From Magallana gigas (Eukaryota): DNA of 64,000 bases. The notes beneath the pieces are model-generated. The model was not told the DNA's origin. It saw only the letters and a program-made list of their open reading frames with translations, and did not search any database. The stretch spans positions 47,864,001-47,928,000 of the forward strand of contig NC_088857.1 in assembly GCF_963853765.1 (NCBI RefSeq), written 5' to 3'. Shown piece after piece: positions 18,705 to 57,772 of this stretch. Within the stretch, counting starts at the first letter, position 1, and every line of letters starts with the position of its first letter. A program made the position numbers and the translations under genes.

Positions 18705-21206
18705 ATGCCAGTTTTAAGTATGGATTATTTACTTCCAACATTGATCGTGCTGTATTGGACAATATCAATTGCTCATGGACATAAACAAAAAAGTTGTTCT
18801 TCCGATAAAAGATGCAAATGCATTCAACTTGCTGATCAAACCTGGAAAGCTATTTGCTCGGGTTTAGCCCTATATCAATTCCCAACATTCCAAGAAGATG
18901 TTTCGGAGATAAACCTCAACAATAATTCCATTCGTCATTGGAATGCGACTCGCCAATTTCCATTCTACCTCCGAGAGCTTTCGATGCAGAAAAACACCTT
19001 ATTCTTCTATGGTATTTCAGATCTTTCTTTCATTAAAGATCTTGTCAATCTTAGAGTTTTGGACGTTTCCGATAATGTGGATTATGAACGGGACATGGGA
19101 TACCCTGCAAAAGACTTTCGGCTTCTAAAAGATCTGACAGCACTGTACATTGATGGACTAAGGCTTGGAAATTTCAATGCCAACGAATGGAATTTAACTA
19201 GTTTAACCAATCTTACCATTGTTGACCATTGCTTCTTTGTTAGACTCGACGAAGGTTTTTTCAGCGGGTTGCAAAATCTAGAATATTTGGTGATTAATGG
19301 TTGTCCCTTGTTAAAGACAATCGACGAGGGCGTGTTTAGTTGGCTCCCCTTTTTGCATACCTTGGACTTATCCTTCAATGAACACCTGAAGTTCGCTCCC
19401 TTTAAAAACGTGTCTCTCGATTTGCAATCTACCAAAATTCAAATTCTGAAGGCCAAGAAAGTGCATTGTACTTTTGGTATAGGAAATCTCTTGCGAAGAG
19501 ATCATATTATAAACTTTCAGAACACCTCTATCACTGAATTGGACTTGTCAAGCAATCGTATAGAGATGATGGAGAAGGATGTTCCCAAATATCTACCTTC
19601 TAATCTTACAATACTAAACGTGTCGGACAATCAGTTTACCTGGGGACTGTACATGTTATCTTACACGTTTCTGAGAAATCTTCGAATCGCAGATGTCAGT
19701 TTACAGTATTCTTACAGTTTTAAAAATATAAATGAGATGGGCTGTGAAAATTCTTTAGACTGTGGCGACACGACGTCCGAATCGTTATTATTTTCTGAAG
19801 ATGCCTCAAACCACCACCAAGCATCCTTATCCAGAAAAATTAATATTTCTGTGTATGTACCCTGCAAACTCGAAAAGATATTTTTTCATTCAAGCAAGTT
19901 TTATTTCAACATAGGAGAAGTTCATGTCAGGCATAATCATATCAAGGAATATCATGTGAAGAACAATTTTTTCTACAGTTTAATTGGGCCTATGTATGGA
20001 ATGGAATATGCAGAGTATGTAGATTTCTCTAGAAATTTCGTGAAAAACATCTCTAAATCTTTCTTTGACACTTTTCCAAATCTTACGTATTTAGATTTGA
20101 GTAAAAATTTATTAGGAAACTGTTTAAACGAGAACGTTCAATATGACCACTTTAAGTCCCTACAAAAACTCGTAGAAATAAGACTTTCATCGAACGAAAT
20201 ATCAACGATTCCGAGCAAACTACTTTCAAATGCTGTCTCTTTGGAGATATTGGACTTAAGCTACAACCTGATATCAAATTTTACTTTCACATTAAGCGTC
20301 AAGAGTCCACTAAAAATTCTCGATCTATCGAACAACCGACTGCGGGAAATTTCTCGGGAAAATATCAACAGTCTGGAGGACAAACACAGGCGCTTCAACC
20401 TAACATTGGATCTCTCGGGCAATCTGCTAGACTGTACCTGTGACACAATTCCTTTCATACATTGGATCAGAGATTCGGAAATAAATTTCCCAAATAAAAA
20501 CTCTTATCAGTGCAAAATGTCTCACAACAGAAAGCGTACTTTCAGTGAACTAACCAGTATATTGAATGAACTTGGAAATGAATGCTCCTCCAATGCAGCG
20601 TCGATGACAATCGGGATAACGATGACCGTGATGGCAGTTATAATCGTCGGTATAACCACCCTACTTTATAGATTTCGATGGACTATTCGATATTTTTTCT
20701 ATCTTACCAAATGGGAATTTCAAGAAATTATCAGCCCAAAGGAACAGAAAAGACAGAAAGATTTCGAATACTCTGCTTTTGTGACGTACTCGGAGAACGA
20801 TTCGAACTTCGCAGAAATTGAGATGGTGCATCACTTAGAGGAAGAAGGGACACTCAAAATCTGCTTACCAAATCGAGACTTTAGCCCAAATGTTCGTACT
20901 TATGGCAGCATAACCCGTGCTATTCACAATAGCAAGAAAATAATCTGTATCGTTACAGAGGCGTTTCTTGAAGACAGATGGTGTATGTACCAGTTACAGA
21001 TGGCCGAAGAGGACAGGGTACATCGGGAAGACAGCGACTGCATCGTTTTCATTTTCTTTTCACCTCCATCGGAAGAAGATATGAGAGGAGTTGACAGATC
21101 TCTCTTTCTTGTATCACTCATTGAGCAGAGATCGTACGCGCTATTTCCAAAACTTGAAGCGGAGCGCGCTCTATTCTGGCAAAAGTTGGTTGATGTTCTT
21201 AAATGA
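18705..21206 (+). CDS. Toll-like receptor A (833 aa; signal peptide, LRRNT, LRRs, single LRRCT, TM, TIR); divergent member of the cluster
   Basis: Intact ORF with LxxLxLxxN repeats, NLLDCTCDTIPFIHW LRRCT, TM segment around IGITMTVMAVIIVGITTLLY, TIR with FEYSAFVTYS and terminal FW. Acceptor taatag at 18696 and an upstream donor after 18536 suggest a 5' UTR intron. Confidence 0.95.
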   Translation: MPVLSMDYLLPTLIVLYWTISIAHGHKQKSCSSDKRCKCIQLADQTWKAICSGLALYQFPTFQEDVSEINLNNNSIRHWNATRQFPFYLRELSMQKNTLFFYGISDLSFIKDLVNLRVLDVSDNVDYERDMGYPAKDFRLLKDLTALYIDGLRLGNFNANEWNLTSLTNLTIVDHCFFVRLDEGFFSGLQNLEYLVINGCPLLKTIDEGVFSWLPFLHTLDLSFNEHLKFAPFKNVSLDLQSTKIQILKAKKVHCTFGIGNLLRRDHIINFQNTSITELDLSSNRIEMMEKDVPKYLPSNLTILNVSDNQFTWGLYMLSYTFLRNLRIADVSLQYSYSFKNINEMGCENSLDCGDTTSESLLFSEDASNHHQASLSRKINISVYVPCKLEKIFFHSSKFYFNIGEVHVRHNHIKEYHVKNNFFYSLIGPMYGMEYAEYVDFSRNFVKNISKSFFDTFPNLTYLDLSKNLLGNCLNENVQYDHFKSLQKLVEIRLSSNEISTIPSKLLSNAVSLEILDLSYNLISNFTFTLSVKSPLKILDLSNNRLREISRENINSLEDKHRRFNLTLDLSGNLLDCTCDTIPFIHWIRDSEINFPNKNSYQCKMSHNRKRTFSELTSILNELGNECSSNAASMTIGITMTVMAVIIVGITTLLYRFRWTIRYFFYLTKWEFQEIISPKEQKRQKDFEYSAFVTYSENDSNFAEIEMVHHLEEEGTLKICLPNRDFSPNVRTYGSITRAIHNSKKIICIVTEAFLEDRWCMYQLQMAEEDRVHREDSDCIVFIFFSPPSEEDMRGVDRSLFLVSLIEQRSYALFPKLEAERALFWQKLVDVLK

Positions 21207-37396: not shown

Positions 37397-37720
37397 GAAT
37401 CATTCTTTGAGTATTATGAGGTGATGATTTTGGTCGGGGCGTGATCAAATCCAATCAAGTCCGAAGAGCTTTTTGATAGATTTGATCACGTCCCGACCGA
37501 AATTATCACCTCATAATATTCAAAGAATGATTCCTTATTACTTATATTTATATAGTTTTAAGCCATCGTATGATTGAATATTTAAATATAAATAAGCAAA
37601 CCCCGCTGGCGCCTCAATTTGGCGTCATTTTAAGTTATGGGTTATATAATAAAAAAATCGATACGTAGTGTTATTACAGGCTAAGAAACTGGAAAATGTA
37701 AATATTAGCAGATAAAACCA
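37397..37720. mobile_element. Non-autonomous element beginning with a 55-bp-arm hairpin (37397-37451 / 37479-37533)
   Basis: GAATCATTCTTTGAGTATTATGAGGTGAT...GTGATCAAATC and its inverted copy, read directly. Confidence 0.7.
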
Positions 37721-37853
37721 AGGTTATGATTATTATTGTCTACATTTGCTACCTTCTTTCATTTACCATGTCTTTTTTTTATTTTTAGATCATGGAAAAT
37801 ATTGCACAGAAATAATTTTTACAAGAATAAAGAAAAATTAGTTCGAGTGACAA

Positions 37854-40430
37854 ATGGCACACAACATACATTATTTGACAATTTTCGTTTGCATTGTTAA
37901 GTTCTTGAAAGGACCAAAATGTACGAATGAAGAAAAATGTAACTGTACAAAATTACCAAATTTTAAAGAACTGTTTCACATGGACTGTTCCAATAAAGGA
38001 TTGACTGAAATGCCAATTCCTTCCATAGACTTTGAAGTTTATAGCATTGATTTATCTCAAAACAAGTTACGGAACGTTTTAATTACTGAAAATTATTCTA
38101 GGACATTAAAACAATTGAATTTATCTCACAATGCATTAAGAAATCTATCGAATAACAGTTTTAACTGGATTCCATATCTTGAAGTGTTAGATTTGTCATA
38201 TAATAATCTCACATTATCCAATACAAGACTTCCCAATCTGGTATTCCAATATCTGAGTAACCTTAAGGTTCTGAACTTGTCTCACAATGACGTCATTGGT
38301 ACAGACCATTACAATGCAGAAGTATTCCGGCACACTGAATCTCTGGAGACGCTAGTCATTGACGGCCTCCGAAATGGCAACTTTGATTTTACAAAACATG
38401 ACAAAAGGTGTGATCGTCCACATAAAGATACAAGCATATATTTGAAAAAGTTGACAACACTTGTAGTTTCAGGACGTAGAGAACGCAAAAAATGTTTGGT
38501 AAAACATCTGTCCGCCGACTTTTTTCAGAGTGTCTTTAATCTAAAGTATTTAGACATGTCTGCTTGCGCAATCCAATCAGTGGATAAAAAAAGTTTGTTG
38601 CTGTCAGAGCTACAATATTTAGATTTGTCCTACAACGAACATTTATCTTTTAAATCTTTTCAAAATTTGTCTATACCGCAAACTTTGAAAACACTGAAAT
38701 TGGACAAAATTTGTTGCACATTTGGAATTGGTACCTACATCACACAAGATATGGCCGAATTATTCTGGAAGAGTTCAGTAGAATATCTTTCACTTAAAAG
38801 CAATAGACTGGAGACGGCAGTAAGCAATGGGTTTAATTATTTACCTCAAAATCTAACCCGTTTGGATGTATCAGACAACAGACTCACTTTTGGGGCCTAT
38901 GGCTTTCCCATTCCTTTTTTGAAAAAATTGCAAGTTGTGAATATGCAAAATCAATTCTATCCACATTTTAAAGAAAGGTATAACAATTTGGAAGAGTGTA
39001 AAGAAGGCTTCGTGTGCTCCTCTCGTCCAGATGGAAATAACTCTACCTCTGGTTGGAATTTTGCGAGTTACCATTCAAAAGACTTCGTGTTTTACGCACC
39101 TCCCAGCCTGGAAACAATCAATTACTCTAATTCTTCACTAAATACAGTTATCCGTCAGATTAATGTAGACCCGAACAACAGTGTAAAAAACGTCGTTTTA
39201 AGTCATAATTTTTTGGAAACTCTTGAAGGGCCGATTTACGGACTACACAAACTTGAAAAAGTTGATTTTTCCCATAATTATATTTCTTATTTATCACCAG
39301 TTTTCTTTGGAAATGGTTCAACTTTAAAGAACTTGATCTTAAAAAACAACTTATTAGGAAACTGCATGAGCAAACCTAACTTGACATATTTCGGAAACCT
39401 CTGGAATTTAACATTGTTAGATCTTTCATCCAATATAATCCGCTTTGCAGCTCCTGACATTTTTGAAGGTCTAGAATCACTGCGGATATTGAATCTTAGT
39501 TTTAATTTACTGCGAAATGTTTCATTCAGAATGCACCAGATGCCTTCTTTGAGAACATTAGATCTTTCTTTTAATGCACTTTTGCCATTTTCCGACTCTA
39601 CAATTCAAATTCTGGAATCGAGACAACAAACTCGTCAACTGGAAATTATCCTTTCAGGGAACGAATTTCAGTGTACGTGCGACTCTCTTAATTTCCTAAA
39701 GTGGATGCTACGAAACAAAAATACTGTCATTGTAGATTATTCATACCTTTGTCGAAATATGTACCATGCCATCGACAACAATGATGAGTTGGACATGGTA
39801 AGTAAGATGCTAGATAAGAAATGCGACGATTACAAAGAAATCATTGGTATTGTATCTGGACTGTTTATTGTTTTCTTTGCGTTTATTATTGGTGGAATTA
39901 TTCATCGCTACCGGTGGAAACTTCGCTATTTCTATTACATGTCGAAATGTAGCGCTACCATATCACACATATCCTATGGTAGAGTATACGACTATGACGT
40001 ATTTGTTTCTTATGCCGATGAGGAGAAGGATTTTGTCATACAGGAAATTACGTCAGAATTAGAGGAAGCGTCAGATTTGAAACTGTGTCTACATGAGCGA
40101 GATTTTACACTAGGTTTATCAATCGGCGAGAACATAACCAAGGCAATATGTAACAGCAGAAAGGTTTTGTGCGTCGTAACAGAGAACTTTTTGTGCTCTC
40201 AGTGGTGTATGTATGAACTAGAGATGGCCCTCACAGACAACAGGTACTCCAGAGTCGATCAGTCTGTTTTCCTCATCATGTATGGGGGATTGCCGACCGA
40301 TAGCTGTAAAATTCGTTCATCGAAACAACTTACCTCATTAGTAAAGAAGCACGCCTATCTGGAATATCCTAATGATGAGAGTGGTAGAGCTGAGTTCTGG
40401 AATTCACTCAAAATTAAGCTAGGGGAGTAA
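37854..40430 (+). CDS. Toll-like receptor C (858 aa) with a BB-loop Pro->Leu substitution
   Basis: Intact ORF with the same architecture as TLR-B. TIR box 2 reads LCLHERDFTLG. Acceptor atttttag at 37788. Confidence 0.96.
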   Translation: MAHNIHYLTIFVCIVKFLKGPKCTNEEKCNCTKLPNFKELFHMDCSNKGLTEMPIPSIDFEVYSIDLSQNKLRNVLITENYSRTLKQLNLSHNALRNLSNNSFNWIPYLEVLDLSYNNLTLSNTRLPNLVFQYLSNLKVLNLSHNDVIGTDHYNAEVFRHTESLETLVIDGLRNGNFDFTKHDKRCDRPHKDTSIYLKKLTTLVVSGRRERKKCLVKHLSADFFQSVFNLKYLDMSACAIQSVDKKSLLLSELQYLDLSYNEHLSFKSFQNLSIPQTLKTLKLDKICCTFGIGTYITQDMAELFWKSSVEYLSLKSNRLETAVSNGFNYLPQNLTRLDVSDNRLTFGAYGFPIPFLKKLQVVNMQNQFYPHFKERYNNLEECKEGFVCSSRPDGNNSTSGWNFASYHSKDFVFYAPPSLETINYSNSSLNTVIRQINVDPNNSVKNVVLSHNFLETLEGPIYGLHKLEKVDFSHNYISYLSPVFFGNGSTLKNLILKNNLLGNCMSKPNLTYFGNLWNLTLLDLSSNIIRFAAPDIFEGLESLRILNLSFNLLRNVSFRMHQMPSLRTLDLSFNALLPFSDSTIQILESRQQTRQLEIILSGNEFQCTCDSLNFLKWMLRNKNTVIVDYSYLCRNMYHAIDNNDELDMVSKMLDKKCDDYKEIIGIVSGLFIVFFAFIIGGIIHRYRWKLRYFYYMSKCSATISHISYGRVYDYDVFVSYADEEKDFVIQEITSELEEASDLKLCLHERDFTLGLSIGENITKAICNSRKVLCVVTENFLCSQWCMYELEMALTDNRYSRVDQSVFLIMYGGLPTDSCKIRSSKQLTSLVKKHAYLEYPNDESGRAEFWNSLKIKLGE

Positions 40431-42919
40431 CCGTTTTCAGAGTTTTGGTAAACTTTATTTATAATTTTTGTAAAATCTAAAATTGAGTAATGGCTAAAAC
40501 CCCGATCCCCACATATAAACTCCGCGGTTTTTACTCTTTGTTTATGAACAAGATGTTAACTTTAACTATCATTCGAAAGGCTATTTGTTGACAGGTTGTG
40601 TGTGGTTTAACTGATTTAACTTCGTCATTAGATGTAATGGCAAATTCATAAGCAATTTAAGAAAGGTGCAAAGGTTGCTTAGGTATTTGTGTAACAATCG
40701 AACCACTCAACAAACCATGGCATATTTGAGAAGCTTGGTAACCCCTGAAAATATATTTTGCGTTGACGTGTGTGAGAACAGATATTTGGCAGTTCTTTTA
40801 ACAGTAAATGATGTGTTTTTCTGTGGATTTTCGAGATCATCAAACTTTGCAGACTAACCTCTACACTATGACATTATACAGATGTTTTGTAATAACTGAT
40901 TTATATTAATAAAATATGTATAGGTAATTTCAATTTTTTTGTTTACAGAATTTTGTCTCGACGACATCGGGAAAGCTTCAATATGTGTATATAAAAAAAT
41001 ATACTTGTAAAAATATCATATTATCCAACCCAAGCATTTACATTCTGGTATTTTAAAAACAACTTAAGTATTGCTGGGTTGATGAAGATTTCATTCAAAC
41101 TCATAAGATATATTTACATTGCAAAATTAATATATTAATATAATGTATTCCTGCAAGCTTTTGCACAGTAAACATTGACCTACTTAACATTTGCAAAACA
41201 GTGTCATACTAATTAGTCATTAGTACACACTTCCTTATTGTTAATAATACTGTACAGGTACATAAATATATTTACTTCCATCAAATACAAAGGAAACTAA
41301 ATTAAACACTCATAAAATATCTTATATTTTTGTTGTTTTCATGACAACAAAGGAAATAATATAAATAAAACTAAGAACTGTTCATACCAAACACTTTATT
41401 AAGTTTAAAACAAACAATTAACTTTTTTGTCTTGATTTGTTATTCAAGATTTCCCAAACAAACCCTTTTGAGTCCTCGTCCTTCTCCCCAGAATGAATGC
41501 GCCTGATTTTATATGATATTATATTAATATTATATTTTTAAAAAAAATCTAACTTCAAGGATACTTTTTTGTCATTTCCTTTTACAAACAGAAATTCAAA
41601 ACATAAATATTATCTTTAAAACAAAATTTATCAGATATACCTTTCAGAAAGTTGAAGACACTGGGTCATTTGTTTTATTTAAAAAGACGGCCTATGAATA
41701 TAAGATGATTTTTAACTGAATAAATCTTGTGTTTGAAAAAAACAACATCATGCCCAATAGGAATTTTTTCACAATCATTATTTTCTTCCTGAGACGACGG
41801 GGGTTACAACTTTTATTTATATCAATAACCCTTTACCTAAAGGTTTATATTGCATAGTGGTTTCAGAGAAGACGAATGTACAAGAATACATATAGAAAAA
41901 CGTTGGGTCAAAGGCATAGACGGCACGCTTGAACAAATGGTTTAGTTTTTCCTCAATGGTCTTTGGGCACTGTATTAAGGTATATACATTTACGCCGATT
42001 TTAACGTTGTTTTGGTATGTTAGAGACTTGACCCAAACTTTGTCAATTTGATGATCTACATAAGTTAAAATTTCTGCTATTTATACAATTCAGTTAAAAC
42101 GCATTTAAAAGTATTGATGATAATTTCCAATTAATTTATTCACTGACCCGTCCAGTAAGTAAATACTCCAGTTTTAATACTCATTATCACCTAAACATGT
42201 AATGTTGCAAGCATATTCAGTTTTACTATGTGAACAAGAAGGCGACACAAAAGCGTGGTCGGCATGCACGTTTGTTGAGTTGAACTTACTTTATTGACTA
42301 ATAATGCCAAAAGGATTGGACACAAGTTCTAAAAACTTTGATAGACCTTTCGAATTCATAATCGAGTTATTCTTGAGTCGAGGGGCCACCAAAAGGGATG
42401 ATATTGACGTTTTGTTTAATTTATTCTGTGATCAGCTATGAATTCAAATGGTGGTATATTGGTTTATCGATAAAAGTTATTTTTTTGTAACGAAAGTTTT
42501 GAAGGAATAATTTTTTGAGCGTCAAAAAAGTAATTTCACTATCTTATTATGTTAACAAAATTACTGTGAATCCTCCCCCTAATCACGGGATTGTTCTCTC
42601 GATTACTTTTTTGCGGTCATACGCAGATTTACACTTCCGTGATTTTTTTATGAATATGCATTTGAACATTCTCATATCTTCTTACATAAAAAACCAGAAT
42701 ATTTAATTAGTAACAATGCATAACATTGCACATCCATCACTGTCTCCTTTTAATACAGATCATCACACTGACACAGTTTAGATCGGGTTTCCAACACAGA
42801 AAAACAGCGCTAAAAACGGCAAACATATCTTTAAGTGTATGCATTTGAGACTATTATTAAAGAATATTTACATCTACCAAGTATTATTCCCTCTTTTTCT
42901 TACGGAAACGTATAGTTAA

Positions 42920-46164: not shown

Positions 46165-48759
46165 ATGGCACATTGCATTCAGTATTTTATTATCTTTTTC
46201 TGCTTTGATGAGTTCGCGCGAGGAAGATCTTGTTGCAATGAACAGAAATGTGTTTGTGCTCAATTAGAACACTTTAAAGAACTTTATCACATGGACTGTT
46301 CCAATAGAGGATTGACTGAGATACCAATTCCTTCCAAAGACACCGAAGTTTATAGCATTGATTTATCACGAAACGAGTTACGAAACGTTACAATAACTAA
46401 TCATTTTTCTAGAACTTTGAAACAATTAAATTTATCTCACAATGAACTAAGCATCCTTTCGAATAACAGTTTTAACTGGATTCCATACCTTGAAGTTTTA
46501 GATTTGTCCTATAATATTCTCAGATTGTCCAACACAAGTCTTCCCAATCTGGTATTCCAATACCTGAGTAACCTAAAGGTCCTGAACTTGTCTCACAATG
46601 ACGTCATCGGTACAGACCATTACAATGCAGAAATATTTCGTCATACTGAATCTTTGGAGACGCTAGTCATTGACGGCTTGCGAAATGGCAACTTCGACTT
46701 TAAAACAAAAAATAAAAGGTGCGCTCCATCATATGTAACAAACCATGACACAATAGAATTAACCAAACTTACAACACTGATAGTGTCCGGACGAAGAAAT
46801 CGCTCCAAGTGCTTAGTTACGGATCTGTCAGCAGGCTTTTTCGACAGTGTATCTAATATCACGTATTTAGACATGTCTGGTTGCGCAATCCAATCAATCG
46901 GCAGAGAAAGCTTGTCGCCTTTATCACATTTAACATACTTGGACGTGTCCTATAATGAACAACTTTCTTTTCATTCCATTCGAAATATTTCAACCCTCAA
47001 AGGTCTAAAGACACTAAAACTGGACAAAATCCATTGCACATTTGGCAGGGGTATATACATAACAGAAGATATGGTACATGCTCTCCGAGATACTTCCATA
47101 GAAAATATTTCCCTTAAAAGCAATAGAATAGAGATGGCTGCACGCAGTGTGTATTACTATTTACCTCCAAATTTGACAAATGCAGATATCTCCGACAATA
47201 GATTGACTTTTGGAGCATATGTTCTTACGGCTTATGCTTTCAGGAATCTTAAGTTTGCTAATCTAAGCGGTCAATCATCATCCCATTTTACCGGTAAAAC
47301 TGATGATTTTATGATCTGTAAACACGCGACGGTGTGCTCTTCATTAAGTACGCAGCATACTCACCCGGTCCTTAATCGGGAAATTTCATTGTTTCGTTCG
47401 AAAGAAGGCGTAAAACTCTACCTACCTCCCCATCTAGAAACAATAGACATTTCTAGTTCATCACTGAGTTCGAATATTCATGTACTCTATATTGACCCGA
47501 ATAACAATTTGAAAACAATAAATTTTAGCCATAACTTTTTTCAACATCTCGGGGGACCAGTCTATGGACTACAAAAAATTGAAACATGCGATTTTTCAAA
47601 TAACTTTATTTCTTATCTATCGCCAGATTTCTTTATATATTGTACCACGTTAAAATATATTAATTTCAAAGGTAACTTGTTAGGGAATTCGATGAGCAAA
47701 TCAAACGCGACTTATTTTGTACATCTCAGAAATTTGACATTTTTGGACCTTTCATCAAATGTTATTCGCTTTGTTTCCCCTGACATTTTTGAAGGTTTGG
47801 AATCTCTGAAAACACTGAATCTTAGTTTCAATTTACTTAGAAATTTTTCATTTAGAACGCACCAGATGCCTTTTTTAAGAACACTAGATCTTTCGTTTAA
47901 TGAACTTTTGCCATTTTCCGATTTTACAATTAAGTTCCTAGAATCAAGACAACGTTTGCAGTCACTGAAAATAATACTGACAGGAAATGTGATTCCATGT
48001 ACTTGCGACTCCCTTGATTTTTTTAAGTGGATGCTTAGTCACGAAAAAACTGTCGAAGTAGATTATTCATATATTTGTCAAAATATGCATTCTGTAGAAA
48101 ACAGCAACGACTTGGAATTGATCAGAAAGATTCTTATGAAAAAATGTGACGATTACGATGAAATTATTGGGGTTGTGTCTGCACTTTTTGTTGTGTTCTT
48201 TGCGTTTATTGTTAGCGGAATTATTCATCGCTACCGGTGGAAGCTTCGATATATCTATTACATGTCAATATGGAGCACTACCACGTCACACAAATCATAT
48301 GGTAAAGTATACGACTATGACGCTTTTGTTTCTTATGCCGACGAGGAGAATGATTTTGTCATACAGGAAATGACGCCAGAGCTAGAGGAAGTGTCAGACT
48401 TGAGACTGTGTCTCCACGAGCGAGATTTTACACCAGGTATATCAATCGGCGAGAACATAACCAAGGCAATATGTAACAGCAGAAAGGTTTTGTGTGTCGT
48501 AACAGAGAACTTTTTGTGCTCTCAGTGGTGTATGTATGAACTAGAGATGGCCCTCACAGACAACAGGTACTCCAGAGACGATCAATCGGTTTTCCTTATC
48601 ATGTACGGAGGATTGCCGACTGATAGCTGTAAAATTCGTTCATCGATTCGACTTATGTCTTTAGTGAAGGAACACGCCTATCTAGAATATCCTAATGATG
48701 AGAGTAACAGAGCTGAATTCTGGAATTCACTAAGACTAATAGCTGGGAAAAAACCTTAA
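46165..48759 (+). CDS. Toll-like receptor D (864 aa)
   Basis: Intact ORF with LRRNT, LRRs, LRRCT (NVIPCTCDSLDFFKW), TM and TIR. Acceptor ttttag at 46096. Confidence 0.97.
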   Translation: MAHCIQYFIIFFCFDEFARGRSCCNEQKCVCAQLEHFKELYHMDCSNRGLTEIPIPSKDTEVYSIDLSRNELRNVTITNHFSRTLKQLNLSHNELSILSNNSFNWIPYLEVLDLSYNILRLSNTSLPNLVFQYLSNLKVLNLSHNDVIGTDHYNAEIFRHTESLETLVIDGLRNGNFDFKTKNKRCAPSYVTNHDTIELTKLTTLIVSGRRNRSKCLVTDLSAGFFDSVSNITYLDMSGCAIQSIGRESLSPLSHLTYLDVSYNEQLSFHSIRNISTLKGLKTLKLDKIHCTFGRGIYITEDMVHALRDTSIENISLKSNRIEMAARSVYYYLPPNLTNADISDNRLTFGAYVLTAYAFRNLKFANLSGQSSSHFTGKTDDFMICKHATVCSSLSTQHTHPVLNREISLFRSKEGVKLYLPPHLETIDISSSSLSSNIHVLYIDPNNNLKTINFSHNFFQHLGGPVYGLQKIETCDFSNNFISYLSPDFFIYCTTLKYINFKGNLLGNSMSKSNATYFVHLRNLTFLDLSSNVIRFVSPDIFEGLESLKTLNLSFNLLRNFSFRTHQMPFLRTLDLSFNELLPFSDFTIKFLESRQRLQSLKIILTGNVIPCTCDSLDFFKWMLSHEKTVEVDYSYICQNMHSVENSNDLELIRKILMKKCDDYDEIIGVVSALFVVFFAFIVSGIIHRYRWKLRYIYYMSIWSTTTSHKSYGKVYDYDAFVSYADEENDFVIQEMTPELEEVSDLRLCLHERDFTPGISIGENITKAICNSRKVLCVVTENFLCSQWCMYELEMALTDNRYSRDDQSVFLIMYGGLPTDSCKIRSSIRLMSLVKEHAYLEYPNDESNRAEFWNSLRLIAGKKP

Positions 48760-55049: not shown

Positions 55050-55165
55050 AACTTCTAAAATTAAAATATTTATCAATAATTAATTCTATTCTCAGATTGG
55101 TCAACAAAGACATTTCACGGAAAAAGACAAAACTTGGACAGAAATGTATTAAGGATCGAGTGAAA

Positions 55166-57772
55166 ATGGAACATCCAATTCATTGTCTTATAATTTTTCT
55201 ATGCACTAATGCGTGCTTGCTTGGACTATCTTTATACAACGAAGAAACGTGTAGCTGTTTTCCAATGAACAATTTTCGACAGCTTTATCATGTGGACTGT
55301 TCTGGAAAGGGACTGACCAAAATTCCTTCTAGTTTCACCAATATAGCAGTATATAGTATTGATTTATCCCATAACAAATTACAAACGGTTATGATTACCA
55401 AAAACTATACCAGAACTTTAAAAGAATTGAATCTATCTTACAATGAATTAGAAACCCTGTCTGATAGCTCTTTTAAATGGATTCCCTATCTTAAAGTATT
55501 GAATTTGTCAAATAATAATCTACATTTCTCCAAAACCAGTCTTCCAGATCTTGTATTCCAATATCTCAGTAACTTAGAAGTTCTAGACTTGTCTTTTAAT
55601 GGAGTGAAGGGCCCAACTCATTATAATCCAGAAATATTCAAATACACTACATCTCTACGAATTTTAATCATTGACGGCCTGCAAGATGGCAATTTCAGTT
55701 TTACCACTAATGACAAAAGGTTTTCTCCATCACATGATTCACATCATGATACATATATAGAGTTGACTAAGCTGACAAAACTTATAGTGTCTGGACGAAG
55801 AAATCGCACGAAGTGCTCGATCAAAATCCTGTCTGAGGGTTTTTTCAAGAGTGTTTCTCATCTGAAATATTTAGACATGTCTGGTTGTGCAATTCGATCA
55901 GTCGATAAAGAAAGCTTGTCACTATTATTAAATCTACAATATTTAGATTTATCCTATAACGAACTACTTTCTTTTATATTGCTACGAAATATTTCACTAC
56001 CCAAAAGCATGAAAACGCTAAAACTGGATAAAATCCACTGCACGTTTGGAATAGGAACGTATCTTACACATGATATGGTCAAGATATTCCTGAATAGTTC
56101 CATAGAGTTCATTTCTCTTCGCAGCAATAGACTTGAGATGTCCATAGAGAATATATCTTCTTATTTACCCCCAAATCTGACCTATTTAGATCTAGCAGAC
56201 AATAAACTAACATTCGGAAGGTATATTCTTTCCGTGAAAGGTATGAAGAGTCTAAAATTTCTGGACCTGCACGAACAACATTCGACACATTTTACCGGCA
56301 AAGGTAAAGATTTCGTGGAATGTTACAACACCGAGCAGTGTTCTTTAACGCCTCCGGGTCGATTCTACCCAGTGTCAACTGAGGTGTTATCAAAGTATTA
56401 TTCTCAAGGTTACAGATTTTACGCGCCTCCTCTGTTAGAGACTTTGGATTACTCTAGTTCTTATCTTAATTCGGAGATAGGTAAAATTACCTTGGATCCA
56501 AATAACAGTGTGAAAAAAATAAATCTCAGTCATAACTTTTTTCAAAATCTCAGAGGACCAGTATACGGATTCTACAAAATTGAAACCGTTGATTTTTCTC
56601 ATAATTTTATATCTAATTTATCGACAGTTTTCTTTGAAAATGGTACCACCTTGAAATACCTTAACTTCAGCAGTAACTTGTTAGGAAATTGCATGAGCAA
56701 ACCAAACTCGGCTTACTTCAAAAATCTTTATAATTTAATGTCACTGGATCTCTCCTCGAATGTTATCCGCTTTGCAGCTCCTGGCATATTTGACGGCCTT
56801 AAATCATTGGAAATATTAAATCTTAGTTACAATTTACTGAGAGAGTTTTCAATACATTTAAACCAGATGCCTTCATTAACTACCTTAGATCTTTCTTTTA
56901 ATGAACTCTTGCCATTTTCGGATTCTACCATAAAGATCTTTGAATCGAGACAACAGAAACATCAAATGAATGTTATACTGACAGGAAACGAAATTCCATG
57001 CACTTGTGACTCATTAAATTTTCTTCAATGGATGTTACGATGCAGAGAGCAAATTACTATAAATTATTCAGATATTTGTCAGAATATGCATATAGTTATT
57101 AAAAATAGCAGCGACTTAGAAATGATCAGCAAGACGCTAGGAAAGAAGTGCGATGATTACGAAGAAATCATTGGTGTGGTATCTGGACTTTTTGTTGTTT
57201 TCTTTGCGTTTATTATTGGTGGAATTATTCATCGCTACCGGTGGAAACTTCGATATTTCTACTACATGTCAAAATGGAGCACTACCACGTCACACAAATC
57301 CTATGGTAAAGTATATGACTATGACGCTTTTGTTTCATATGCCGATGAGGAGAAGGATTTTGTCATACAGGAAATGACGTCAGAATTAGAGGAAGTGTCA
57401 GACTTGAGATTGTGTCTCCATGAGCGAGATTTTACACCAGGCAAATCAATCGGCGAGAACATAACCAAGGCAATATGTAACAGCAGAAAAGTTTTGTGCG
57501 TCGTAACAGAGAACTTTTTGTGCTCTCAGTGGTGTATGTATGAACTAGAGATGGCCCTCACAGACAACAGGTACTCCAGAGACGATCAATCGGTTTTCCT
57601 CATCATGTACGGAGGATTGCCGACCGATAGCTGTAAAATTCGTTCATCGATCCGACTTATGTCTTTAGTGAAGGAGAACGCCTATCTGGAATATCCTAAT
57701 GATGAGAGCAATAGAGCAGAATTCTGGAATTCACTAAGACTAATAGTGAGAGAAGCCGCTAAAGCTGAGTAA
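55166..57772 (+). CDS. Toll-like receptor E (868 aa from ATG 55166, MEHPIHCLIIFLC...)
   Basis: The ORF track starts at a TTG (55097). The first ATG followed by a signal peptide is at 55166, matching the paralog starts. Acceptor ttctcag at 55096. Confidence 0.95.
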   Translation: MEHPIHCLIIFLCTNACLLGLSLYNEETCSCFPMNNFRQLYHVDCSGKGLTKIPSSFTNIAVYSIDLSHNKLQTVMITKNYTRTLKELNLSYNELETLSDSSFKWIPYLKVLNLSNNNLHFSKTSLPDLVFQYLSNLEVLDLSFNGVKGPTHYNPEIFKYTTSLRILIIDGLQDGNFSFTTNDKRFSPSHDSHHDTYIELTKLTKLIVSGRRNRTKCSIKILSEGFFKSVSHLKYLDMSGCAIRSVDKESLSLLLNLQYLDLSYNELLSFILLRNISLPKSMKTLKLDKIHCTFGIGTYLTHDMVKIFLNSSIEFISLRSNRLEMSIENISSYLPPNLTYLDLADNKLTFGRYILSVKGMKSLKFLDLHEQHSTHFTGKGKDFVECYNTEQCSLTPPGRFYPVSTEVLSKYYSQGYRFYAPPLLETLDYSSSYLNSEIGKITLDPNNSVKKINLSHNFFQNLRGPVYGFYKIETVDFSHNFISNLSTVFFENGTTLKYLNFSSNLLGNCMSKPNSAYFKNLYNLMSLDLSSNVIRFAAPGIFDGLKSLEILNLSYNLLREFSIHLNQMPSLTTLDLSFNELLPFSDSTIKIFESRQQKHQMNVILTGNEIPCTCDSLNFLQWMLRCREQITINYSDICQNMHIVIKNSSDLEMISKTLGKKCDDYEEIIGVVSGLFVVFFAFIIGGIIHRYRWKLRYFYYMSKWSTTTSHKSYGKVYDYDAFVSYADEEKDFVIQEMTSELEEVSDLRLCLHERDFTPGKSIGENITKAICNSRKVLCVVTENFLCSQWCMYELEMALTDNRYSRDDQSVFLIMYGGLPTDSCKIRSSIRLMSLVKENAYLEYPNDESNRAEFWNSLRLIVREAAKAE

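What the first reader, a model, noticed from the sequence alone, without database searches (positions are those of the whole stretch)
40090..40130. TLR-C carries a Pro->Leu change at the critical TIR BB-loop proline in an otherwise intact gene: candidate decoy or adaptor-switched receptor
Seen: CCA in B, D and E (ERDFTPG) is CTA at 40110-40112 in C (ERDFTLG, codon 753). C also has private changes nearby (RVDQ, SSKQLTSLVKKH, and SKC for SKW) and has partly escaped TIR homogenisation, while its ectodomain is a B/D-like mosaic. Established: this proline is the residue mutated in TLR4 P712H (C3H/HeJ), which abolishes signalling and acts as dominant negative; TLR3 has Ala here and uses TRIF rather than MyD88. 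Inference: a paired activating/inhibitory receptor system within one cluster, in which C shares ligand surfaces with B but dampens or reroutes signalling.
Basis: partly seen in the sequence, partly recalled or inferred. Interest (0 to 1): 0.72.

Follow-up and report, generated by a model that had tools for sequence, protein, structure and literature searches.

The report
Oyster TLR paralogue with Leu BB-loop
One of five neighbouring oyster Toll-like receptor genes really carries leucine instead of the "critical" signalling-loop proline and is intact and transcribed, but about a quarter of this oyster's TIR domains lack that proline and two of them are published to signal normally, so the change is modestly interesting and not evidence of a decoy receptor.

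Summary
Codon 753 of TLR-C (40110-40112) is CTA (Leu). Paralogues A, B, D and E have CCA, and the residue aligns without gaps to the BB-loop proline of human TLR1/2/6.

It is not an error or a private allele:
- The same Leu is in a second Crassostrea gigas assembly and in C. angulata.
- It is in contigs of three RNA runs from three studies.
- RNA contigs start at a splice acceptor, so the gene is transcribed.
- Leu is derived: C. virginica, Ostrea and Saccostrea relatives keep Pro.

C's TIR evolves about 5x faster than B/D/E (omega about 0.26 against 0.05 or less) but is still constrained.

The decoy or adaptor-switch inference loses its premise:
- 31 of 110 TIR loci in this genome have V, I, A or L at this site, mostly in intact TLR-length frames.
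- Published CgTLR1 and CgTLR2 have Ile here and activate NF-kB through MyD88.
- No TRIF N-terminal domain was found in the genome.

Several other "private" C changes (C699, V801, the KQLT..KKH block) vary between samples, apparently as gene-conversion tracts.

Most likely C is a signalling-competent, possibly attenuated receptor. A modulatory role is not excluded. The scan also noted a non-Pro TIR elsewhere in this genome.

The parts
37854..40430 (+). TLR-C coding sequence: 858 codons plus stop, single coding exon. Signal peptide, LRR ectodomain, TM, TIR.
   Evidence: ORF. Pfam LRR_8 (2.5e-35) and TIR (1.9e-18). 99% identical to RefSeq 'toll-like receptor 4' of C. angulata and C. gigas.
40110..40112 (+). 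Codon 753, CTA = Leu, at the BB-loop proline position.
   Evidence: No other letter at 40111 in four runs. Exact or matching pieces span it in X6, X20 and X15.
39993..40409 (+). TIR domain (about codons 714-852).
   Evidence: Pfam TIR/TIR_2. PDB TLR1/6/2 TIR matches. AF2 model with the usual five strands and helices.
40047..40116 (+). C-specific TIR segment (alpha-A end to BB loop) with seven C-private nucleotide states, including CTA.
   Evidence: The exact unitig 40019-40146 is found in X6 and X20 and is contained in the X15 contig 40011-40381.
40117..40254 (+). Central TIR tract with no C-private difference, homogenised with B/D/E.
40255..40350 (+). 3' TIR tract whose C-private states (V801, K824, Q825, T827, K832, H833 and synonymous sites) are replaced by B/D/E-like states in some samples.
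   Evidence: X5 and X15 are B/D/E-like at 40255-40286, and X15 also at 40324-40350. Classified.
39948..39950 (+). Codon 699, TGT (Cys), private to this reference. TGG (Trp) everywhere else examined.
   Evidence: T>G at 39950 in X5, X15, X6. (W in the other C. gigas assembly and in C. angulata).
37787..37853 (+). 5' untranslated start of the coding exon, preceded by a polypyrimidine tract and an AG acceptor at 37785-37786.
   Evidence: RNA contigs of X15 and X6 begin at 37787 with unmatched letters before it. The DNA run X5 runs straight through. Sequence.
27480..27511 (+). End of a non-coding 5' exon of TLR-C, about 10.3 kb upstream, followed by GTAAGA at 27512.
   Evidence: The X6 loose end matches 27484-27509 with 1 mismatch, and 0 of 100 shuffles match. 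Sequence. The exact junction is uncertain by 2 nt.
23113..25716 (+). TLR-B, closest paralogue of C (79% aa), BB loop FTPG.
46165..48759 (+). TLR-D, BB loop FTPG.
55166..57772 (+). TLR-E, BB loop FTPG. The likely ATG start is 23 codons inside the listed TTG ORF.
   Evidence: The 868-aa product is P0005.
18705..21206 (+). TLR-A, a distant member of the cluster (34% aa), BB loop FSPN.

Best explanation
TLR-C is a young, intact, transcribed paralogue of TLR-B in a five-gene tandem TLR cluster of the Pacific oyster. Gene conversion keeps the TIR domains of B, D and E nearly identical. C's TIR receives such tracts only in part, and they differ between individuals. In the unconverted segments C has accumulated derived replacements, one of which is P753L in the BB loop. 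The Leu is real and is shared with the sister taxon C. angulata.

Inferred mechanism: C remains a membrane TLR that still assembles with MyD88-family TIR adaptors, as oyster TLRs with Ile at this site do. The Leu, together with changes in the CD loop, alpha-D and alpha-E, most likely changes the strength or partner preference of TIR-TIR assembly quantitatively. It probably does not abolish it.

Shown here: the sequence, its derived state, its presence in several samples, transcription, residual purifying selection, and the family-wide base rate. Inferred: signalling competence.
For: Real and shared.
- CTA is in the window.
- The same Leu is in P0034 (C. gigas XP_034310217.1) and P0001 (C. angulata XP_052678822.1).
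- It is in RNA-run contigs of three studies, with no alternative letter.

Derived. C. virginica, O. edulis, S. echinata, B, D, E and the Logan sequence P0003 all have Pro.

Expressed. RNA contigs start at the AG acceptor at 37787 and continue into a sequence found 10.3 kb upstream, next to a GT donor.

Still constrained.
- The C-lineage TIR has 12 nonsynonymous and 9 synonymous changes, fewer nonsynonymous than neutral (p=0.018).
- Lineage omega is about 0.26, derived.
- Ectodomain polymorphisms are about 7-8 nonsynonymous to 7 synonymous.
- All TIR positions that are at least 90% conserved in alignment A2 are retained (L34, E35, R47, D48, G52, I59, S66, W82).

Proline is dispensable in this species.
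- 31 of 110 TIR loci have V/I/A/L. By my own tally of the frame lengths, 23 of these sit in open frames of at least 620 aa without stops.
- The site toggles V/I/A/L between paralogues that are 94-98% identical.
- CgTLR1 (99/100 identical to L072) and CgTLR2 (59/60 identical to L068/L070) have Ile. They activate NF-kB and are blocked by a CgMyD88 TIR-deletion mutant (PMC3788107).
Against: - In C's own subfamily the motif ERDFTPG(K/I)SIGENIT is conserved across ostreid genera, and all 29 closest TIRs in the genome have Pro. Here the Pro was under long-term constraint, and its loss may matter more than in families that never had it.
- C's TIR omega is 5-10x that of B/D/E (p=0.006-0.046).
- Several other ostreid-invariant sites also changed: A716V in box 1, I824K, R825Q, M827T. 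This fits relaxation or a functional shift.
- Human TLR2 P681A is strongly impaired for two of three dimer types (PMC3634009).
- No functional data exist for C itself.
- HEK293 over-expression of CgTLR1/2 is a crude assay.
Confidence: 0.55

Rival explanations
1. Modulatory receptor. L753, with the other C-private surface changes, weakens or redirects TIR assembly. C would then act as a hypomorphic, dominant-negative or adaptor-shifted partner of B-like receptors, and selection would keep the Leu despite gene conversion from its neighbours.
For: - Leu is derived in a subfamily where Pro is otherwise invariant.
- It is present in every sample examined, while flanking C-private blocks are overwritten by B/D/E-like tracts in some individuals.
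- C's TIR omega is elevated but below 1.
- The private replacements fall on the BB loop, CD loop, alpha-D and alpha-E, while the core is homogenised.
- C's C-terminal LRRs are 86-94% identical to B in DNA.
- Mammalian Pro mutants can be dominant negative (PMC3594740).
Against: - There is no assay.
- Only about seven haplotype sources were seen, so retention of Leu could be chance.
- Leu is not the His of the classical mutants.
- Oyster TLRs with Ile at the site signal via MyD88.
- 28% of TIR loci lack Pro.
- No TRIF N-terminal domain was found, so a TLR3-like switch has no obvious adaptor.
- Co-expression or dimerisation with B was not tested.
Confidence: 0.22
2. Relaxed constraint. After duplication C became redundant, its TIR is drifting, and P753L is one of several mildly deleterious changes on the way to loss of signalling function.
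For: - There are 5-10x more nonsynonymous change in C's TIR than in B/D/E, including at ostreid-invariant sites in box 1, the BB loop and alpha-D.
- Many private states are polymorphic.
Against: - The ORF is intact in three assemblies.
- Nonsynonymous changes are still fewer than neutral (p=0.018).
- Ectodomain omega is like that of its paralogues (0.35 against 0.17-0.28).
- The gene is transcribed and spliced.
- All nearly invariant TIR residues are kept.
Confidence: 0.18
3. Assembly or sequencing error, or an allele private to the reference individual.
For: Codon 699 (TGT) in the same gene does turn out to be private to this reference. That shows such cases occur.
Against: CTA is found in two further assemblies and in independent runs, in phase with the neighbouring C-specific variants.
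Confidence: 0.02

Closest known systems
Crassostrea gigas CgTLR1 and CgTLR2 (Zhang et al. 2013, PMC3788107)
   Same: Same species and same single-cysteine-cluster TLR architecture. Both have an aliphatic residue (Ile) instead of Pro before the BB-loop Gly: RDFDIG and RDFEIG.
   Different: They belong to other TLR subfamilies (26-28% TIR identity to C in A2) in which all sampled members lack Pro. They are shown to activate NF-kB via CgMyD88. C is untested, and its Leu is a recent change in a Pro-conserving subfamily.
Human TLR1/TLR6/TLR2 TIR domains (PDB 1FYV, 4OM7, 1FYW)
   Same: Best solved-structure matches, E 1e-20 to 1e-22, with a gapless alignment through box 2.
   Different: They have Pro at the site. 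TLR2 P681H abolishes signalling, and P681A gives a partial, partner-dependent loss (PMC3594740, PMC3634009).
Mouse TLR4 P712H (Lps-d, C3H/HeJ)
   Same: Same structural position in the BB loop.
   Different: It is a spontaneous Pro->His loss-of-function allele in a mammal. C has Leu, shared by two oyster taxa, in a genome where the Pro is often absent.
TLR3 (Ala in the BB loop, TRIF-coupled)
   Same: A natural non-Pro BB loop in a functional receptor.
   Different: It couples to TRIF. No TRIF N-terminal domain (PF17798) was detected in this genome (weak negative).
Grass carp TLR20.2/TLR20.3 (PMC10568090)
   Same: Tandemly duplicated TLRs with Leu at the BB-loop proline position, responsive to infection. 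The consequence for adaptor choice is unknown.
   Different: They are vertebrate TLR11-family members and not orthologous.

Membership tests
Toll-like receptor (single cysteine-cluster type) | LRR ectodomain followed by one TM helix and a C-terminal TIR domain in one polypeptide | tested here: met
   Pfam LRR_8 2.5e-35 and TIR 1.9e-18. A hydrophobic stretch lies between the CDDY motif and HRYRW. RefSeq names the identical protein a toll-like receptor.
Canonical TIR (boxes 1-3) | Box 1 (Y/F)DAF(V/I)SY | tested here: met
   YDVFVSY in C. The A->V change is derived.
Canonical TIR (boxes 1-3) | Box 2 RDxxPG with the BB-loop proline | tested here: not met
   RDFTLG.
Canonical TIR (boxes 1-3) | Box 3 FW near the C-terminus | tested here: met
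   AEFWNSL.
Decoy or dominant-negative TIR receptor (TLR4 P712H-like) | Fails to recruit MyD88 or activate NF-kB, and inhibits a signalling partner | not testable with these tools
   This needs reporter and co-IP assays.
Decoy or dominant-negative TIR receptor (TLR4 P712H-like) | Loss of the BB-loop Pro is by itself disabling in this organism's TLRs | tested here: not met
   CgTLR1 and CgTLR2 have Ile and signal via MyD88. 31 of 110 TIR loci lack Pro, most in intact frames.
TLR3-like TRIF-coupled receptor | A TRIF-type adaptor is present | tested here: inconclusive
   There is no PF17798 match in the genome, but the six-frame exon-wise search rang in no control either.
Processed or decaying pseudogene | Stops, frameshifts, or omega near 1 | tested here: not met
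   The ORF is intact in three assemblies. TIR nonsynonymous changes are below neutral, p=0.018. The transcript is spliced.

The most novel reading that the evidence does not exclude
L753 is held in TLR-C by selection against recurrent gene conversion from B/D/E because it makes C an attenuating or adaptor-shifted partner of B-like receptors. That would be a naturally evolved activating/modulating TLR pair inside one invertebrate gene cluster.
Probability: 0.12. Interest if true: 0.65.

Novelty: new member of a known kind. Interest (0 to 1): 0.3.

Why it matters
TLRs without the BB-loop proline are common in oysters, and some are known to signal, so the substitution alone is ordinary. The useful part is the setting. 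B and C are very close paralogues, with B-C synonymous divergence of 0.18 in the C-terminal ectodomain part. Their TIR domains differ at only about a dozen residues, including the proline, and gene-conversion tracts appear to segregate. That gives a clean natural pair for testing, by reciprocal P/L swaps, how much the BB-loop proline matters outside vertebrates. It is also a locus where conversion against selection could be measured in population data.

Tried and rejected
- A sequencing error or reference-private allele was rejected.
- 'Not expressed' was rejected.
- The TIR-only protein search for fragment alleles carrying Pro in the C context gave no hits. This is uninformative.
- Literature searches combining BB loop, proline and oyster or invertebrate gave 0 papers.
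- The search of earlier scan notes gave only one related note.
- The TRIF N-terminal domain search was blank, and the controls did not ring.
- The upstream exon, acceptor region and 3' UTR have no paralogous copies in the window.
- Complex prediction was not sent. TIR-TIR contacts are weak, one job could not compare Leu with Pro, and a failure would mean nothing.
- C orthologues in other Asian Crassostrea species could not be found. The only extra sequence, P0003 (Logan run SRR18178433), groups with B and has Pro.
- Read laying returned contigs only. Allele frequency, and a C allele whose whole 40047-40116 segment had been converted (which would fall below the 95% threshold), cannot be judged.
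- For run X5, the piece covering 40111 is not among those listed.

Full report
**What is there**

The window lies on contig C5 of a 564-Mb, 29-contig genome. Sequencing runs that hold the stretch are labelled oyster or mollusc. The encoded proteins are identical or 99% identical to RefSeq proteins of Crassostrea (Magallana) gigas and C. angulata.

Five intronless-CDS TLR genes lie head to tail on the + strand:

| Gene | Coordinates |
|---|---|
| A | 18705-21206 |
| B | 23113-25716 |
| C | 37854-40430 |
| D | 46165-48759 |
| E | 55166-57772 |

All have LRR and TIR Pfam domains.

**The observation**

Codon 753 of C (40110-40112) is CTA. The aligned codon is CCA in A, B, D and E. The C TIR aligns to human TLR1, TLR6 and TLR2 TIR structures at E 1e-20 to 1e-22. 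There is no gap around box 2, so L753 falls on the BB-loop proline.

**Is the codon real and common?**

- The same Leu, in the same context, is in a second C. gigas assembly (XP_034310217.1) and in C. angulata (XP_052678822.1).
- I laid contigs of four runs from four studies on 37700-40600. No run shows another letter at 40111.
- An exact C-specific unitig, 40019-40146, carries all seven C-private states of that segment in phase. It is present in X6 and X20, and an X15 contig (40011-40381) also reads T.
- For the DNA run X5 the bin is covered and no alternative letter is reported, but the covering piece is not among those listed.
- Contigs drop rare variants, so allele frequency is not established.

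**Expression**

In X15 (RNA-Seq on record) and X6 (RNA by guess), contigs cover the whole CDS but begin at 37787. That is directly after a polypyrimidine tract and an AG. The DNA run runs straight through.

The unmatched letters before 37787 in X6 match 27484-27509 (1 mismatch; 0 of 100 shuffles match), next to a GTAAGA donor. So C has a non-coding 5' exon about 10.3 kb upstream and is transcribed and spliced. The junction is uncertain by 2 nt.

**Polarity and company**

Relatives in C. virginica (14 cluster members), Ostrea edulis and Saccostrea echinata all read ERDFTPGKSIGENIT. So Leu is derived in C.

The ectodomain tree is (D, E, ((P0003, B), C)) with strong support.

C also has derived states at other ostreid-invariant sites:
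- A716V in box 1
- I824K, R825Q and M827T in alpha-D
- N844G and R853K

A739 and K743 are shared with P0003, so there B is the converted copy.

**Concerted evolution**

| Comparison | dS | Source |
|---|---|---|
| Among B/D/E, ectodomain | 0.9-1.6 | |
| Among B/D/E, TIR | 0.13-0.25 | |
| Pairs with C, TIR | 0.26-0.31 | |
| B-C, adjacent ectodomain part (codons 431-660) | 0.18 | |

C's TIR has therefore been homogenised less than its neighbours'. Inside C's TIR, 40117-40254 has no private difference, flanked by private segments.

The private states are not constant between samples:

| Site | Reference | Other samples | Source |
|---|---|---|---|
| 39950 (codon 699) | T (Cys) | G (Trp) in X5, X15, X6 and both other assemblies | |
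| 40255-40286 | C-private | B/D/E-like in X5 and X15 | |
| 40324-40350 | C-private | B/E-like in X15, on the same contig as CTA | |

This looks like segregating conversion tracts. Being contig-based, it needs read-level confirmation. L753 (with I706, V716, A739, K743 and L755) was seen in every sample examined; L753 is the one on which the finding rests.

**Selection**

- Pairwise TIR omega is 0.01-0.07 among B/D/E and 0.15-0.19 for pairs with C. That implies about 0.26 on the C lineage.
- By site counting, C has 12 nonsynonymous and 9 synonymous private changes in codons 712-852.
- That is more nonsynonymous than the other lineages (Fisher p=0.006-0.046) but fewer than neutral (binomial p=0.018).
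- Ectodomain omega (B-C 0.35) and the ectodomain polymorphisms (about 7-8 nonsynonymous to 7 synonymous) are ordinary for TLRs.
- All TIR columns at least 90% conserved in a 37-sequence molluscan alignment are retained.

C is therefore not decaying like a pseudogene, but its TIR is under weaker or altered constraint.

**How critical is the proline here?**

I read the BB-loop motif in 110 TIR loci of this genome:

| Residue | Loci |
|---|---|
| Pro | 79 |
| Val | 13 |
| Ile | 9 |
| Ala | 6 |
| Leu | 3 |

- 28% therefore lack Pro. By my own tally of the frame lengths listed, 23 of those 31 lie in stop-free frames of at least 620 aa.
- Six of the 31 (the RDEP[VAL]G family) have a Pro one residue earlier.
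- Between paralogues 94-98% identical, the site toggles among V, I, A and L.
- All 29 TIRs closest to C have Pro. C's change is thus young within a Pro-keeping subfamily.

Published experiments bear on this directly. The sequences of CgTLR1 and CgTLR2 in Figure S1 of Zhang et al. 2013 read RDFDIG and RDFEIG. They match loci L072 (99/100) and L068/L070 (59/60). All four CgTLRs activated an NF-kB reporter in a dose-dependent way. CgMyD88 enhanced CgTLR1 signalling, and a CgMyD88 TIR-deletion mutant blocked CgTLR1-4.

Other published cases:
- Grass carp TLR20.2 and TLR20.3 naturally have Leu at this site (PMC10568090).
- Human TLR2 P681A is nearly intact with TLR6 but much reduced with TLR1 or as a homodimer (PMC3634009).
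- The classical disabling mutants are Pro->His (PMC3594740).
- A TRIF N-terminal domain was not detected in the genome, though that search has little power.

**Verdict**

The sequence facts in the finding are right. The easy refutations (error, rare allele, silent gene) fail. The inference of a decoy or adaptor-switched receptor rests on a rule that does not hold in oysters.

| Reading | Probability |
|---|---|
| C is a signalling-competent, possibly attenuated or partner-shifted TLR whose TIR has partly escaped conversion and constraint | about 0.55 |
| A genuine modulatory role | about 0.22 |
| Drift toward loss of function | about 0.18 |
| Artefact | about 0.02 |

The kind of thing, a TLR paralogue with a non-proline BB loop, is known. 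This member appears undescribed. Another first-stage note (s1-385522) flagged a non-Pro TIR elsewhere in this genome, which agrees with the survey.

Noticed in passing
window 39948-39950: Codon 699 of TLR-C is TGT (Cys) only in this reference. Three other runs and two other assemblies read TGG (Trp). It is a private allele or a base error of the assembly.
   Followed up: yes
window 40172-40350: C alleles in different runs carry B/D/E-like tracts of different extent: 40172-40286 in X5 and 40255-40350 in X15. This suggests gene-conversion tracts segregating in the population. The evidence comes from contigs only.
   Followed up: partly
window 27480-27511 and 37787: TLR-C has a non-coding 5' exon about 10.3 kb upstream of its coding exon. 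A 7-codon upstream ORF (ATG at 37790) lies in the 5' UTR part of the coding exon.
   Followed up: partly
G000:C2:21957575-21992908; G000:C9:19872540-19991912 (L031-L049): Two tandem TLR subfamilies whose members are 87-98% identical in the TIR vary at the BB-loop position among V, I, A and L. The site looks like a hotspot of change between close paralogues.
   Followed up: partly
G000:C2:30895868-30896173 (L064) against L059/L065: A second case of Pro against Ala at the BB-loop site between fairly close TIRs (76-79% identical).
   Followed up: no
window 55097-55165: The listed ORF of TLR-E starts at a TTG 23 codons upstream of the probable ATG at 55166. The 868-aa product matches the database protein.
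   Followed up: partly
window 32137-32248: A GC-rich 32-bp tandem repeat (3.5 copies, palindromic unit) lies inside the long 5' intron of TLR-C.
   Followed up: no
L012 (G000:C1:67186353-67189742): Besides its intact TIR, this locus holds a second, degenerate TIR-like piece reading RDLITG. It is probably a pseudogene fragment.
   Followed up: no
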